The notes under the pieces are model-generated. The model saw only the letters and a program-made list of their open reading frames with translations, did no database searches and was not told the origin of the DNA. A program made the translations under genes and the position numbers. This document shows positions 2,070 to 58,949 of a stretch of DNA of 64,000 nt, piece after piece. The stretch comes from Euprymna scolopes (lineage: Eukaryota), in assembly GCA_053919585.1 (NCBI GenBank), contig CM132798.1; one strand, written 5' to 3'. Numbering within the stretch: position 1 is the stretch's first letter; each line of letters starts with the position of its first letter.

Positions 2070-2349
2070 TGCTTCCATTCAGTCTCCAAAGACAAAGGAT
2101 ACCCCTGTATGGGCAGCTGCGTGTGAAATTGTGAGGCAAGGGTGGTGCAATCACCAACCACACCTCTGCTGAATCGGCACTGTTTGAATCCAGTGGCAAG
2201 GAGAAGTCCAGGATGACTGGAAACAATGCTGAGATAAGCGGAGAGCACATACAGCACCTAGAAGTCCCAAATAGTAACCCATTTAGTACTGACCAGGTTC
2301 AACGTTGCTTAACTTTGGTGATCCAGCAGAACCGGTGTGTCAACGTGAT
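2068..2349 (-). mobile_element. 5S rRNA-derived SINE (SINE3-like); 5S-like head 2349-2248 plus non-5S body
   Basis: The minus strand reads ATCACGTTGACACACCGGTTCTGCTGGATCACCAAAGTTAAGCAACGTTGAACCTGGTCAGTACTAAATGGGTTACTATTTGGGACTTCTAGGTGCTGTA, a diverged invertebrate 5S rRNA, and continues into ~180 nt of unrelated sequence with no oligo-T terminator. Confidence 0.75.
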
Positions 2350-2547
2350 TAGATAGATAGATAGATAGATAGATAGGTAGATAGATAGATAGATGCGTGT
2401 GATNNNNNNNNNNNNNNNNNNNNNNNNNNNNNNNNNNNNNNNNNNNNNNNNNNNNNNNNNNNNNNNNNNNNNNNNNNNNNNNNNNNNNNNNNNNNNNNNN
2501 NNNNNNNNNNNNNNNNNNNNNNNNNNNNNNNNNNNNNNNNNNNNNNN

Positions 2548-11934: not shown

Positions 11935-12022
<88 letters not shown>

Positions 12023-12182
12023 CATAACATTTTTGTGGGTTTGTGGGGTACAAAATTTATATATTGCAATTTTGTGTAAACAAATTGAGATTAGGTACTT
12101 TGGACAATGTCAAAACATTGTTAATGCACTGGACAATGTCAAAACATTGTTAATTCCTGGCTTGAGTTAGTTGCTTGTCTAG

Positions 12183-12226
12183 CCGCACTGGTAAGCTGTG
12201 AAACAGCGAAACAGTACTGTATGTGG
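12183..12226 (+). ncRNA. Type I hammerhead ribozyme motif (core mutated CUGGUAA)
   Basis: CCGCA-CTGGTAA-GCTGT.GAA.ACAGC-GAAA-CAGTACTG-TA-TGTGG: stems I, II and III all pair; GUA triplet. Confidence 0.75.
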
Positions 12227-12466
12227 ATAACTATAACGCTCCCTATCTTAGTGTGAGCATTTGGGAAGGTGATATACAAATTACCATTAGCGTATGAAAC
12301 GATGCTCTTTGTGTAAACAAATTGAGATTAGGTACTTTGGACAATGTCAAAACATTTTTAATTCACCGTCCGCATTGCAGCCACCATATAGCGCAACAAT
12401 TAGAAGCTCCGACTGTCGTTTGGGCGATCGGGTTTCGATCCTGACTTGAGGTAGTTGTTTGCCTAG

Positions 12467-12510
12467 CCATACTAATGAGCTGTGAAACAGCGAAACAATA
12501 CTGTATGTGG
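12467..12510 (+). ncRNA. Type I hammerhead ribozyme motif (core mutated CUAAUGA)
   Basis: CCATA-CTAATGA-GCTGT.GAA.ACAGC-GAAA-CAATACTG-TA-TGTGG. Confidence 0.75.
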
Positions 12511-12512
12511 AT

Positions 12513-12562
<50 letters not shown>

Positions 12563-53000: not shown

Positions 53001-53306
53001 GGGCCCGTGGCACAGTGGATAGAAACATTGAGTTTCTACGGTTCCAGGTTAGCATACTTAGAAGATAGCGGTTTCAATTTTAGCCAATGCGGGTCAGAGG
53101 TGAGACAACAACTATGGAAGGCAGTAATTACTGCGAATAAGGTTACAGGACTCAGCATTCCTATCTCGTCACAGTTAACCACCTGAAGAAGACAAGAGAA
53201 TAATTTGGTCGAGACGTGACGAAACAACAACTATGGAGATGAGGATTGCAGTCCACAAAAAAAATGAATGCACAAATTATGAAGCTTCATCTCAAAGGAT
53301 TCCAAA
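53001..53306 (+). mobile_element. SINE-like element: intron-containing pre-tRNA-Arg(TCT)-derived head (53002-53095) plus HHR-like tail
   Basis: Acceptor stem GGCCCGT/GCGGGTC; anticodon arm TTGAG-TT TCT A-[~17 nt]-A-CTTAG; CTGAAGA..GTC GAGAC at 53183-53215; tail gatgagga...tcatctcaaa like the family. Confidence 0.65.
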
Positions 53307-55770: not shown

Positions 55771-58262
55771 TCACGGTGCCATTTTAATCTCCTTATATTC
55801 GTTTATTCCTTGCTCTTCTTTATCTCTTTCGATTTTATTAGCATCTACCTCAGTTACTATTCTCGGTTTTGATATAACCTTTTCATCGGCTAAATCATTC
55901 CCTAATAATAGTGAAATGCCTTTCTTTGGTAAATTTTCCACAACTCCTACTTCGACCGGACCGCTTACTGTGGTCGAATCGAGGGGGATTCGGTGGAGTG
56001 GGACATCAAGCAAATTTCAACTAATTCCCTGAATGGTGACGGATTCACCGGTTGCTGTTTTCGGTCCGTCCGGCATCTCACTTTTTAAAATCAGAGATTG
56101 GGTTGCCCCCGTATCTCTCAGGATTTTTACTGGTCGTCGATTTTGGTGATTATCTACTGTATGTACCAGACCCTCTGATATAAATGGTTGGTATCCTTTT
56201 CTAATACTATCCTCATTGTCTTTTGTAGAGATCTTGCACGAAGTAATGAAGCCTTGAGGTTTATAATCTATCCCCTTTTTACGTTCGGTATCTTTCTTTA
56301 CCGGGCAGTCCATCATGATGTGTCCTACATTCTTACAGTAGTGGCACGTTATGGGTTTCCACCTGTCGATCAGTTGATAGGTTGGTGGTCGATTTACTTT
56401 CGGGGATGTATTTCTTGGGCTGGGAGGTCGATATACAGTACTTTCTGGACCTGTATTCCAACTAGAGTTCGTAACAGACATTCTCCGAAGGTTTGTGTGA
56501 ATTTCACCCTCGAATGGGTCAATTTTATTTCTACCCGTCTTGTGTGTAAGAGCATACTCGTCGGCTAGAATCGTCATTTCATAGGCTGTAGCGATCTGGC
56601 GTTCGTTCAAAAACACTTTTAGGTCGTCAGGGATACAACATTTAAATTCTTCCGTCAGGATCATCTGCTGGAGTCTATTATAATCGGACTGTGCATGTTT
56701 AGCAGAAATCCACCTATTAAACTGGGTTTCTTTCTGCCGAAAGAATTCCACGTAGGTTTGCCCGTTCTCTTTTCGGTATGACCTAAACTTCTGTCGATAT
56801 GCCTCGGATACCAATTCATACGATTTGAGGATGGCGGATTTTATAACATTATAATTCGAACAATCCTCGGTCGAGAGAGAGGCATACACCTCTTGCGCTC
56901 CCTCTTAATGCGGTCTGTAACAGTATCGGCCAAACTTCTAGAGGCCATTTTGCACTCAGGGCAATCTTTTCAAAATGTTGGAAGTACCCGTCCACATTCG
57001 ATTTGTGGAACGTCGGTACAAGGCGGGCATGTTTGGGGACATCAAACTCCTCCCGTCTTTCTTGGTGGGGTTCGGGCATACCTTCTCACAGAGTTCTTAA
57101 AACTGCTTCGTCGACTAAGAAATTGTCGACGAGACATTGTGTTACTATCCTAACAATGCTCTTCTCATACCTGGCCTAACGTCTAGTTCATAATGTCTAC
57201 CTATTGCTAAGATGCTGTCTTTTCTAAATTTGCATCATTCTTCAAAAGTAGGAGAATCTAGGAATTCTTGTATTCCCGACATGTTGAACTAACTAGTCCT
57301 CGCTACCTCAAATGTGTTCGACTATCCAGGGTGTCTTTAGGGAGGGTATATTCCGGCACAACCCCCCAATTTGTTACGACGTATCCCAGTCCTACTGGGG
57401 ACGGTAGAGATGGGTGACGTAACAAAATATATTGAAAAAATAAAGTTTCCCAGGTTCCTTGATAATGCGTTGTTATGGGAATGGAACAACCGTCTCGAAG
57501 ACAACAATAAAATGAAATGTACTGGACAACGAAATCACATAAGAAATAACGAGGACAAATATCGTCGAAAAATTAACAAACTTTTATTCATATAAAAAAA
57601 TAAATAAAATTCAATTCAAGAAAAGAAAATTAAATATGCCTAACTAAATGAAATGATTTAATGATTCAAATTCTACCTAGAGAAAAATATATCAACAGTT
57701 AATGTTCACATAAAACAAGAAATCGTCTGCTCAATTAGATACAGGTTCTAGGGTAAGAGAGAGATGTTGGAGAAATGAAAGTTTTGGTTGAAAAACTCAC
57801 TGAATGTCCTTTGAAATGTGACCTTTCTTTTGTCTCTTTTTTTTTAATATATATTTCTTTCCTGTAAATTGTTTATATTTGATTACGCGCGCAGGTTAAT
57901 TTCCATATTTTTGTCCTTCGGATTATTTATGTTTCATTATGCGCGTGCGTGTTAATTGCTCCAAGTATTTGTTTCCGAAGCTCATTGAAGCCCTTGATTT
58001 ATAGTAAAAATTTCACTGCTCCATTGATCCTTCCTTCACTGGGTTCATTCTTTTCTTCAGTCAATATTCTAATTTTGACCGCTGATCAAAACAGATCTTT
58101 ACCGTCGCCGCCAACATCGGCTTGTGTCGTTGATATTTACCTCTGCGACACTGCTACCACGCTGCCGTCGCCTTTCGCCGGTTTCACCACCCCGACCTTC
58201 GCTGACTTACGTTTTGTCGCTTTGAAGCGCGAAGCTCCACTGCCTATTGACAACTTTTTCAG

Positions 58263-58711: not shown

Positions 58712-58899
58712 GAAAAGAGAAAGTTCAATTCCACAAAGAAGACTTATCCGGATAATGTCAAGTTCAACAATAATTATTGGAGCTTATACAGTAGGACAAT
58801 AAGAGTATGAAATGAGGACGCAAAACTATATATTGATAGATATAGAATGGATCATTTATTGAATAATGGAATACAGGCAAAATTTGGGGGATAGAAGGG

Positions 58900-58949
58900 A
58901 CTCTTTATGCCAGGGCATTTCGAAGCCTAATGCTTCTCATCAGAAGAGT
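58900..58949 (-). ncRNA. Canonical type I hammerhead ribozyme
   Basis: ACUCUU-CUGAUGA-GAAGC.AUUAG.GCUUC-GAAA-UGCC.CU.GGCA-UA|AAGAGU: intact core, three paired stems, AUA triplet. Confidence 0.88.

What the first reader, a model, noticed from the sequence alone, without database searches (positions are those of the whole stretch)
12070..12515. Retrozyme-like unit: tRNA-Asp-like Pol III promoter plus type I hammerhead, 284-nt monomer, in the CAPSL intron
Seen: a partly duplicated unit carries two hammerhead folds. Both have the same stem II (GCUGU-GAA-ACAGC), GAAA, a short stem III (palindromic ACAGUACUGU in the first copy), a GUA cleavage triplet and a 5-bp stem I. Predicted cleavage sites (after 12221 and 12505) are 284 nt apart. 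Between them lies a tRNA-like segment with a GTC anticodon arm (TCCGA-CT GTC GT-TTGGG) and a B box (GGTTTCGATCC). Known: animal non-LTR retrozymes, such as schistosome SM-alpha, are short tandem HHR repeats that are Pol III-transcribed and processed into monomeric/circular RNAs; short palindromic stem III favours dimeric cleavage. Inference: this is a mollusc retrozyme family. Each copy here has different core mutations (CUGGUAA, CUAAUGA, CUGAAAA), so these particular copies are probably inactive.
Basis: partly seen in the sequence, partly recalled or inferred. Interest (0 to 1): 0.8.

Follow-up and report, generated by a model that had tools for sequence, protein, structure and literature searches.

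The report
Decayed copy of hammerhead retrozyme family
This is a worn-out, 1.6-unit insertion of a very abundant 283-284-base non-coding jumping element of a mollusc (probably cephalopod) genome whose intact copies carry a textbook self-cutting hammerhead RNA motif; the kind is already known from mussels, blood flukes and other animals, so it is a new family of a known kind.

Summary
Window 12071-12519 is a partly duplicated unit with two hammerhead-like folds whose predicted cut sites, after 12221 and 12505, lie 284 nt apart. Both cores are mutated. The canonical 39-mer (CUGAUGA, stem II, GAAAC, palindromic stem III, GUA, stem I) occurs 7,357 times in the 5.9-Gb genome. Head-to-tail unit junctions occur 3,655 times. 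At least 9,442 insertions end at one fixed 3' point, 14 nt past the cut site, followed by (TA)n.

Insertions run from 0.2 to at least 4-5 units, with variable 5' ends and frequent (TA)n flanks. This is the Penelope-style pattern of animal non-LTR retrozymes. Only 71 insertions end at the cut site, so the copied RNA was uncleaved or religated there.

The "tRNA-Asp" label is weak. No tRNA is called at default thresholds, and the anticodon differs between subfamilies. A box A/box B pair at tRNA spacing is non-random, however. RNA circles, Pol III transcription and the Penelope partner remain unproven.

The scan has already noted sister families elsewhere in this genome. Verdict: a real, inactive copy of a new member of a known kind.

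The parts
11938..12022 (.). (TA)n microsatellite on the 5' side of the insertion (target-type sequence)
   Evidence: about half of sampled copies have (TA)n on the 5' side too
12071..12131 (+). 5'-truncated upstream unit, body part (subfamily A consensus positions 86-146)
   Evidence: alignment to the consensus, 2 mismatches in 61
12129..12154 (+). 26-nt local duplication that stands in place of consensus positions about 147-216, so the tRNA-like piece is missing from the first unit
   Evidence: (family D2)
12155..12221 (+). 3' module of the upstream unit with hammerhead 1; core CUGGUAA at 12188-12194 (A6>G, G8>A); predicted cut after 12221
   Evidence: descriptor negative
12222..12505 (+). 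one full 284-nt unit, from cut site to cut site (consensus 1-283)
   Evidence: 92.5% identical to the subfamily A consensus
12389..12399 (+). box-A-like motif, TAGCGCAACAA here; consensus reads TAGCGCAACGG (A) or TAGCGTAATGG (B)
12408..12424 (+). anticodon-arm-like hairpin UCCGA-CUGUCGU-UUGGG; the stem is kept in subfamily B by paired changes while the 'anticodon' is not
12432..12442 (+). box-B-like motif GTTTCGATCCT (9 of 11 to GGTTCGANNCC), 32 nt after the box-A-like motif
12467..12510 (+). hammerhead 2: core CUAAUGA at 12472-12478 (G5>A), stem III palindrome broken at 12498, predicted cut after 12505
12506..12519 (+). fixed 3' terminus of the family, TGTGGATGACTATA: stem I 3' strand plus its GAC extension
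   Evidence: 45 of 47 sampled copies end here; 9,442 exact terminal 27-mers in the genome
12516..12557 (.). (TA)n tail / 3' flank
33440..33482 (+). a further, 5'-truncated copy of the same family (core CUGAAAA) that runs into a masked N stretch; left unfilled

Best explanation
Window 12071-12519 is one old, inactive insertion (1.6 units with an internal deletion) of a high-copy, non-coding retroelement with a 283-284-nt unit. The element is a metazoan non-LTR retrozyme, or equally a hammerhead-tailed SINE of the schistosome SM-alpha type.

**Shown**
- Intact copies carry a canonical type I hammerhead whose stem III is a 10-nt palindrome.
- Just upstream of the hammerhead lies a tRNA-gene-like box A/box B pair.
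- Every insertion ends at the same point, 14 nt past the ribozyme cut site, followed by (TA)n.
- 5' ends are variable, and lengths run continuously from 0.2 to more than 2.5 units, occasionally at least 4-5.
- Flanks are often (TA)n.
- The hammerhead plus about 45 nt upstream and the tail are nearly identical between two subfamilies whose bodies differ by about 20%.

**Inferred mechanism**
1. Copies that keep the promoter boxes and two hammerheads (at least about 1.45 units) are transcribed.
2. The two hammerheads pair through the stem III palindrome into a double hammerhead and release a unit-length RNA.
3. A cellular RNA ligase closes this RNA into a circle.
4. A reverse transcriptase with a (TA)n-nicking endonuclease primes on the UAUA just after stem I. 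It copies the circle, or an uncut multimer, for a variable distance. The enzyme is most likely that of the abundant Penelope-like elements of this genome.
5. The 5' end is often joined by TA microhomology.

The copy in the window has lost essential core bases in both hammerheads and half of its box A, so it is a fossil.
For: **Family and core**
- BLAST first look found 5,470 candidates.
- The exact canonical 39-mer gives 7,357 hits against 0 for the control.
- Consensus of 30 copies and of 12 copies. Copies of the main subfamily are 97-100% identical to their consensus.
- The hammerhead descriptor hits the consensus and 0 of 50,000 shuffles.

**Dimer**
- Cofolding predicts the double hammerhead, about 9 kcal/mol better than two monomers.
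- This matches the published architecture of metazoan type I hammerheads (PMC4209133).

**Insertion anatomy**
-.
- 3,655 internal junctions with runs of up to 4; 9,442 terminal ends.
- Only 71 ends lie at the cut site.
- Tail-to-tail pairs share one (TA)n tract.

**Module conservation:** 3 of 93 against 43 of 190 differences, p = 1e-5.

**Promoter boxes:** 10/11 + 9/11 at 31 nt spacing, reached by 7 of 5,000 shuffles.

**Non-coding:** no stop-free stretch above 80 aa in a trimer.

**Penelope-like elements are abundant:** 15,397 GIY-YIG candidates, many with open frames of about 806 aa, many in inverted pairs.

**Published traits of Penelope-like elements:** (TA)n bias, and partial tandem or inverted insertions (PMC8557442).

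**RNA:** family sequence is present in libraries on record as RNA-seq.
Against: - No Rfam hammerhead model reaches its threshold even on canonical copies: 20.1 against 48.5 bits, and 16.6 against 52.
- Only assembled contigs of RNA runs were available. Neither circles, nor cut ends, nor the strand, nor even transcription as opposed to DNA carry-over can be shown.
- There is no pile-up of 5' ends at the ribozyme cut site: 23 against 15 at a control 5 nt upstream.
- There is no clear pile-up at the predicted Pol III start: 49 against 23 and 75 in the control windows.
- The whole-unit fold is not unusually stable (z = -1.45).
- The Penelope partner was not identified, because no more DNA of this genome could be fetched.
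- Target-site duplications are mostly not discernible.
Confidence: 0.8

Rival explanations
1. An ordinary tRNA-derived SINE mobilised by a LINE with a microsatellite tail. On this reading the hammerhead is only a passenger or a 3'-end processing signal, and no circular RNA is involved. The multi-unit copies come from read-through transcripts of earlier multi-unit copies.
For: - A box A/B pair at tRNA spacing.
- A fixed 3' end with a simple-repeat tail and strong 5' truncation, both typical of LINE-type target-primed reverse transcription.
- A relaxed ARAGORN cloverleaf in subfamily A.
Against: - Young copies of 2.3-2.5 units, and runs of at least 4 junctions, keep being produced. This needs templates longer than nearly all source copies.
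- The hammerhead and tail are the most conserved part between subfamilies.
- Palindromic stem III, (TA)n targeting and tail-to-tail pairs fit Penelope-like elements rather than LINEs (PMC4209133, PMC8557442).
- No defined SINE-like 5' end is seen.
Confidence: 0.1
2. A protein-less deletion derivative of a Penelope-like element (a pseudo-LTR-only mini-element) that is transcribed by Pol II or by host read-through. On this reading the tRNA-like piece is a structural RNA element or a relic, not a promoter.
For: - Neither the Rfam tRNA model nor ARAGORN at default settings recognises a tRNA.
- The 'anticodon' is not conserved, while its stem is kept by paired changes, which points to a structural constraint.
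- There is no 5'-end pile-up at the predicted Pol III start.
- The family is found in poly(A) RNA-seq libraries, with some poly(A)-like extensions right after the 3' terminus.
Against: - The box A/B match improves in the younger, more successful subfamily and is rare in shuffles.
- There is no T4 run in the sense strand, although this is weak: 20-48% of shuffles also lack one.
- Several other families in this genome pair different B-box heads with the same hammerhead tail (loose ends; earlier notes).
Confidence: 0.2
3. A satellite-like tandem repeat spread by DNA-level processes such as unequal crossing-over or reinsertion of extrachromosomal circular DNA, with hammerhead-like sequence kept by descent only.
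For: Head-to-tail units at 284-nt spacing.
Against: - At least 9,442 dispersed sites on all large contigs share one fixed 3' end.
- 27 of 47 sampled copies are shorter than one unit and truncated only at the 5' side.
- Arrays are short.
Confidence: 0.03

Closest known systems
Metazoan non-LTR retrozymes (Cervera & de la Pena 2020, PMC7229834), e.g. the 350-390-nt repeats of the mussel Mytilus galloprovincialis
   Same: - A short non-coding unit in the 170-400-nt range.
- A type I hammerhead in every unit, with head-to-tail copies.
- Thousands of copies.
- A mollusc host that also holds Penelope-like elements.
   Different: - The sequence is unrelated and the unit is 283-284 nt.
- Most genomic copies are single insertions of 0.2-2.5 units with a fixed 3' end in (TA)n, rather than arrays.
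- A box A/B pair sits just upstream of the ribozyme.
- Circular RNA is shown for the mussel and not shown here.
Schistosome SM-alpha / Sj-alpha elements (SINE-like retroposons with Pol III boxes and a hammerhead; Ferbeyre et al. 1998 as cited in PMC4209133; details from my own knowledge)
   Same: - About 300-nt non-coding units, both dispersed and tandem.
- Internal box A/B-type promoter motifs combined with a type I hammerhead that has a weak stem III.
   Different: - A different phylum and no sequence similarity.
- Here the promoter-like piece lies in the middle of the cut-to-cut unit, directly 5' of the ribozyme.
- Neither self-cleavage nor Pol III transcription has been tested here.
Hammerheads in the pseudo-LTRs of Penelope-like elements, and retrozymes as their non-autonomous derivatives (PMC4209133; PMC8557442; bioRxiv 10.64898/2026.07.22.740005)
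   Same: - A dimer-dependent type I hammerhead.
- Partial tandem copies with a 5'-truncated upstream unit.
- Inverted pairs.
- Insertion into (TA)n, with target duplications that are hard to see.
   Different: - There is no RT/GIY-YIG ORF.
- Similarity to a particular Penelope-like element of this genome could not be tested.
- This hammerhead has full-length helices I and II, not the 'minimal' form.
Newt and other amphibian satellite-2 type hammerhead repeats (amphibian retrozymes)
   Same: A type I hammerhead that needs a double-hammerhead conformation; unit of about 330 nt.
   Different: These are vertebrate families arranged in long tandem arrays. The family here is dispersed and 5'-truncated.
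Plant LTR retrozymes (PMC4918200)
   Same: Non-autonomous, with hammerhead-flanked RNA that circularises.
   Different: They have type III hammerheads in true LTRs, a PBS and PPT, 4-bp target duplications and Gypsy-dependent mobilisation. None of these features is present here.

Membership tests
Hammerhead ribozyme, type I | Conserved core: C3 U4 G5 A6 N7 G8 A9, G12 A13 A14, A15.1-U16.1, H17 not G | tested here: met
   Met in both subfamily consensuses and in 7,357 exact genomic copies. NOT met in the two window copies, which read CUGGUAA and CUAAUGA.
Hammerhead ribozyme, type I | Three helices around the core, with helix I open (type I topology) | tested here: met
   - Helix I is 5 bp, then an internal loop, then 3 bp.
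- Helix II is 5 bp with a GAA loop.
- Helix III is a 10-nt palindrome that can form only between two copies.
- The descriptor hits the consensus and 0 of 50,000 shuffles; cofolding gives the double hammerhead.
Hammerhead ribozyme, type I | Score at or above the gathering threshold of an Rfam hammerhead model | tested here: not met
   On a canonical copy, Hammerhead_3 scores 20.1 bits (threshold 48.5) and HH9 scores 16.6 (threshold 52). Nothing is found at gathering thresholds in 10 loci or in the window. Short helices and a helix III that forms only between two copies are penalised by these models.
Hammerhead ribozyme, type I | Self-cleavage after H17 | not testable with these tools
   Needs in vitro transcription of a monomer and a dimer. 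The genomic 5'-end record shows no pile-up at the cut site.
Metazoan non-LTR retrozyme | Short (about 170-400 nt) non-coding unit in head-to-tail copies, each with a type I hammerhead | tested here: met
   The unit is 283-284 nt. There are 3,655 internal junctions, with up to 4 in a row, and sampled copies of 2.3-2.5 units. No ORF is present.
Metazoan non-LTR retrozyme | Expressed as unit-length linear and circular RNA | tested here: inconclusive
   Family words are held by 18 runs of 6 studies, 4 of them on record as RNA-seq. Exact contigs bridge the cut site. Contigs cannot separate a circle from a tandem copy, from read-through, or from DNA carry-over.
Metazoan non-LTR retrozyme | Co-occurrence with Penelope-like elements in the same genome | tested here: met
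   GIY-YIG gives 15,397 first-look candidates, with frames of about 806 aa and inverted pairs.
tRNA-derived SINE (SM-alpha-like) | tRNA-like cloverleaf recognised by tRNA finders | tested here: not met
   - ARAGORN at default settings finds none in the window or in either consensus.
- The Rfam tRNA model gives no hit at E up to 10 on a canonical copy.
- Only a relaxed ARAGORN run calls Asp(GTC), and only in subfamily A.
- Subfamily B has GCC at the anticodon position.
tRNA-derived SINE (SM-alpha-like) | Box A and box B at tRNA-gene spacing | tested here: met
   Subfamily B scores 10/11 and 9/11 at 31 nt apart, reached by 7 of 5,000 shuffles. Subfamily A scores 9/11 and 9/11, reached by 99 of 5,000.
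tRNA-derived SINE (SM-alpha-like) | Defined 5' end at the Pol III start site in full-length copies | tested here: inconclusive
   5' ends within TA flanks number 49 in the window around the predicted start, against 23 and 75 in the two control windows. Hot spots follow TA microhomology.
Penelope-dependent non-autonomous element | Penelope-type insertion scars: microsatellite target, 5'-truncated partial tandem, inverted pairs | tested here: met
   compared with the description in PMC8557442.
Penelope-dependent non-autonomous element | 3' end or pseudo-LTR shared with an autonomous Penelope-like element of the same genome | not tested
Places of intact-looking ORFs are listed there.

The most novel reading that the evidence does not exclude
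Each insertion that keeps the box A/B pair and two hammerheads would be a self-contained Pol III gene for a 284-nt RNA circle, and the circles themselves would be the templates of rolling-circle reverse transcription by a Penelope-type enzyme.

The genome would then hold a quantitative fossil record of reverse transcription of covalently closed RNA:
- more than 99% of about 9,500 insertions start 14 nt past the ribozyme cut site;
- lengths decay smoothly across the unit boundary, up to at least 4-5 laps;
- there is no pile-up at any RNA 5' end.
Probability: 0.35. Interest if true: 0.65.

Novelty: new member of a known kind. Interest (0 to 1): 0.38.

Why it matters
Animal retrozymes are known, but how they are copied back into DNA is still a hypothesis. 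This family is young: copies are 97-100% identical to their consensus. It is also very numerous, and its insertion scars are unusually clean.

- The fixed 3' end lies just beyond the ribozyme's cut site.
- There is no preferred 5' end.
- Unit boundaries are crossed smoothly.
- TA microhomology is seen at the 5' junctions, and the fixed 3' end runs straight into (TA)n.

That makes the family a good natural data set, and a good source of test constructs, for three questions:
- Are RNA circles the templates?
- Do Penelope-like enzymes do the copying?
- Does a tRNA-type promoter make such elements self-transcribing?

For genome annotation, the family adds a large SINE-like group to a lineage whose SINEs are reported as scarce or under-annotated (PMC8967140). 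This applies if the host is indeed a decapodiform cephalopod, which I did not verify.

The particular copy in the window is dead and probably has no function.

Tried and rejected
- **Rfam.** Gathering-threshold scans of the window and of 10 loci found no hammerhead. An E-value scan found only sub-threshold hammerhead hits.
- **tRNA finders.** ARAGORN at default settings found no tRNA.
- **Third hammerhead in the window.** Its upstream sequence is not a second family. It is a 5'-truncated copy next to a masked N stretch, which I left unfilled.
- **Metagenome scan.** A scan for the 25-nt core gave one unrelated, microbial-looking contig with the same stem II by coincidence.
- **RNA evidence.** Only assembled contigs were available. 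They show presence in RNA-seq libraries but cannot show circles, ends, strand or level.
- **Fossil record of in vivo cleavage.** 5' ends at the cut site number 23, against 15 at a matched control. There is no enrichment.
- **Fossil record of a Pol III start.** The result is inconclusive, because 5' junctions follow TA microhomology.
- **Whole-unit fold.** z = -1.45, so the fold is not exceptional.
- **Absence of T4 runs.** Not significant.
- **Target-site duplications.** Only 2 of 21 copies in non-TA flanks show a 5-nt repeat at both junctions.
- **Penelope partner.** The window's own ORFs gave only an RVT_1 fragment and a SCAN/zinc-knuckle ORF, neither linked to this family.
- **CAPSL intron claim.** Not tested.

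Full report
**1. What is in the window**

- 12071-12129 recurs at 12308-12366 (97%).
- 12155-12235 recurs at 12439-12519 (86%, spacing 284).
- Both of the second pair contain stem II GCUGU-GAA-ACAGC, then GAAA, then a near-palindromic stem III, a GUA triplet and UGUGG. The UGUGG pairs with the five bases before the core.
- The cut sites predicted from this geometry fall after 12221 and 12505, which is 284 nt apart.
- The cores read CUGGUAA and CUAAUGA. G5, A6 and G8 are changed. From established hammerhead biochemistry these bases are essential, so these copies should be dead.
- The stem II + GAAAC 18-mer occurs three times in the window against 0.04 expected. The third copy (33465-33482, core CUGAAAA) abuts a masked N run, which I left alone.
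- Standard detectors see nothing here. There is no hammerhead and no tRNA in Rfam at gathering or E-value thresholds, and no ARAGORN tRNA.

**2. The family**

The 284-nt unit finds thousands of relatives in the window's own genome (5.9 Gb, 925 contigs). The first look gave 5,470 candidates, and the best copies are 87-91% identical to the window copy.

The 3' parts of 30 copies show the canonical core directly: CUGAUGA, the same stem II, GAAAC, ACAGUACUGU, then GUA|UGUGG. A majority-rule consensus was used only as a coordinate system and kept in scratch. It has a period of 283 nt, and copies are 93-97% identical to it.

The exact canonical 39-mer occurs 7,357 times, against 0 for the reversed control, sometimes two or three times in a row at 284-nt spacing.

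Sampling the first 47 such sites on one contig revealed a second, younger subfamily B. Its unit is 284 nt and its copies are 97-100% identical to their consensus.

A strict type I hammerhead descriptor gives the following:
- It requires 5 bp in helix I, CUGANGA, a 4-6 bp helix II, GAAA, UH, and the helix I return strand.
- It hits the consensus.
- It hits none of 50,000 dinucleotide shuffles.
- It hits neither window copy.

The consensus has CUGANGA, and tandem copies exist.

**3. The ribozyme**

- Helix III is A15.1-U16.1 plus three pairs around a 2-nt loop. It cannot close as a hairpin, but it is a perfect 10-nt palindrome.
- Cofolding two hammerhead segments gives the classical double hammerhead: intermolecular helix III, with helix I formed across the two strands. 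The energy is -34.2 kcal/mol against -12.5 for each monomer. The monomer's best fold is a different, inactive pairing.
- This is the architecture described for most metazoan type I hammerheads and for those of Penelope-like elements (PMC4209133).
- Rfam's hammerhead models score canonical copies far below threshold (20.1 against 48.5 bits; 16.6 against 52). I attribute this to the short helices, but it means membership rests on the descriptor and not on a curated model.
- Activity itself is untested.

**4. The tRNA-like piece**

- In subfamily A, a relaxed ARAGORN run calls tRNA-Asp(GTC) at consensus 157-238, with a fair acceptor stem and anticodon arm but poor D and T arms. The default run calls nothing.
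- In subfamily B nothing is called even when relaxed, and the "anticodon" is GCC.
- The Rfam tRNA model gives no hit at E up to 10 on a canonical copy.
- The anticodon-like stem is maintained between subfamilies by paired changes (CC/GG to UU/AA), which speaks for a structural constraint.
- A box A-like and a box B-like motif lie 31-32 nt apart. In subfamily B they score 10/11 and 9/11, reached by only 7 of 5,000 shuffles. In subfamily A the figure is 99 of 5,000.
- The lack of a T4 run is not significant.

"tRNA-Asp-like" is therefore too specific. "tRNA-gene-type promoter boxes" is defensible as a description of the sequence, but promoter function is not shown.

**5. Anatomy of insertions**

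In the unbiased sample of 47 sites:
- 45 copies end at the same base, ...GUA|TGTGGATGACTATA, followed by (TA)n.
- The 5' ends are scattered. Lengths run continuously from 0.19 to 2.54 units: 27 copies are shorter than one unit and 18 are longer than 1.08.

Genome-wide counts agree:

| Feature | Exact matches |
|---|---|
| Terminal 27-mer (fixed 3' end plus TA repeat) | 9,442 |
| Internal unit-to-unit junction (runs of up to four) | 3,655 |
| (TA)n directly at the cut site | 71 |

More than 99% of insertions therefore include the 14 nt beyond the ribozyme's cut site. The RNA that was copied was either never cut at its last hammerhead or had been religated, that is, it was a circle.

Other features:
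- The fixed end coincides with the outer end of the extended helix I (GUC/GAC).
- About half of the 5' flanks are (TA)n.
- Tail-to-tail pairs sharing one (TA)n occur.
- Target-site duplications are mostly not discernible.
- In subfamily A, 8 of 30 full-length copies are exactly one unit long, from TATA to TATA, and one is exactly two units.
- 5'-junction hot spots genome-wide sit where the element has TA or ATAT. 5' joining therefore uses microhomology with the TA target.

**6. Two tests of the genomic fossil record**

- If cut linear RNAs were the usual templates, 5' ends should pile up at the cut site. They do not: 23 sites, against 15 at a control with the same TA microhomology 5 nt upstream.
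- If primary Pol III transcripts were the usual templates, 5' ends should pile up near consensus 153-157. The count there is 49 reverse-strand sites, against 23 in a control window nearer the 3' end and 75 in one further 5'. The last of these contains an ATAT hot spot. This test is inconclusive.

The combination of no preferred 5' end, smooth passage across unit boundaries and a 3' start beyond the cut site fits an endless (circular) or long multimeric template. It does not prove one.

**7. Conservation**

Between subfamilies, the last roughly 80 nt of the unit (box B, hammerhead) plus the 14-nt tail differ at 3 of 93 positions. The rest differs at 43 of 190 (Fisher p = 1e-5). This is the pattern expected if the 3' module is what the ribozyme function and the reverse transcriptase need.

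Loose ends of RNA contigs show other B-box heads joined to the same hammerhead tail. Earlier notes of this scan report several such families in this genome.

**8. RNA**

Words of the family are held by 18 public runs from 6 studies, four of them on record as poly(A) RNA-seq. Only assembled contigs were available. Laid on one unit, exact contigs bridge the cut site, and others run into (TA)n. This shows that the family is present in RNA-seq libraries. It does not show circles, ends or strand, and it does not rule out DNA carry-over.

**9. Who moves it**

The genome is full of young GIY-YIG-bearing ORFs of about 806 aa, often in inverted pairs: 15,397 first-look candidates. This is the signature of Penelope-like elements.

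Four traits are published for Penelope-like elements and for the animal retrozymes thought to depend on them (PMC8557442, PMC4209133, PMC7229834, bioRxiv 10.64898/2026.07.22.740005):
- a bias for (TA)n targets;
- partial tandem copies with a 5'-truncated upstream unit;
- inverted pairs;
- dimer-type hammerheads.

**10. Comparison and verdict**

In design, the element works like the mussel non-LTR retrozymes and the schistosome SM-alpha elements. It meets the sequence-level criteria of a non-LTR retrozyme:
- a short non-coding unit;
- a type I hammerhead in every unit;
- head-to-tail copies;
- co-occurrence with Penelope-like elements.

It is not recognisably a tRNA. RNA circles, Pol III transcription and cleavage are untested.

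The scan has already flagged sister families in the same genome (s1-244840, s1-295506, s1-295499 and others). This is therefore a new family of a known kind, and the copy in the window is a fossil.

What this follow-up adds is the genome-wide junction census. It constrains the template RNA and makes the circle-template idea testable.

Noticed in passing
window 2245-2361 (-): 5S rRNA-like sequence just above Rfam's threshold (39 against 38 bits), with several unpaired stem positions. It may be a pseudogene or a 5S-derived repeat.
   Followed up: no
window 58899-58943 (-): Another hammerhead with an intact CUGAUGA...CGAAA...GUC core. It is unrelated in sequence to the present family. It was also noted earlier by the scan (s1-254982).
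   Followed up: partly
window 53001-53306 (+): A further short element with a tRNA-like head (GGCCCGTGGCACAGTGGATAG...) and a CTGAAGA...CGAAAC hammerhead-like tail. It was noted earlier as s1-254990. The head-plus-hammerhead design recurs in unrelated families.
   Followed up: partly
window 33440-33688: A 5'-truncated copy of the present family (core CUGAAAA) that runs straight into a masked or gap N stretch at 33484-33688. Its upstream flank is low-copy DNA (14 first-look candidates in the genome, only 2 spanning more than 120 nt, at 69-77% identity).
   Followed up: partly
window 31875-32396 (-) and 56017-56889 (-): An ORF with a weak RVT_1 fragment (24.5 bits, below the cut-off), and an ORF with a SCAN domain plus a zinc knuckle (gag-like). 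Neither is linked to the finding.
   Followed up: no
L003, L014 (3' flanks) and L021 (5' flank): The same short motif, CTAGCAGGCC or its reverse complement, lies directly next to three independent copies. It is probably the end of another repeat that is a frequent neighbour or target.
   Followed up: no
L043:1474-1475 (loose ends of RNA contigs): Contigs in RNA runs join other B-box-containing heads (GGTTCGATCCACGCC..., GGTTCAATCCATGGC...) to this family's hammerhead from about consensus 240 onward. The hammerhead tail is therefore shared by several families.
   Followed up: no
L043:1531: In two poly(A) RNA-seq runs, four contigs each continue with a run of A right after GACTA, the family's 3' terminus. 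These could be polyadenylated transcripts or A-rich genomic flanks; this is not resolved.
   Followed up: no
L047:1538-1575: A mini-copy of only 12-15 nt (GAC TGTGGATGACTA) sits between two (TA)n runs just after a normal copy. It is an extreme 5' truncation, and it shows repeated hits into the same TA tract.
   Followed up: no
L095:833-857 (metagenome contig Ga0209068_10084977): The same 25-nt hammerhead core plus stem II appears in an unrelated, microbial-looking context. I take this as coincidental identity of a short ribozyme segment.
   Followed up: partly
L004:236-307: A genuine tRNA gene (Rfam 43.7 bits) lies about 1.2 kb from one copy of the family.
   Followed up: no
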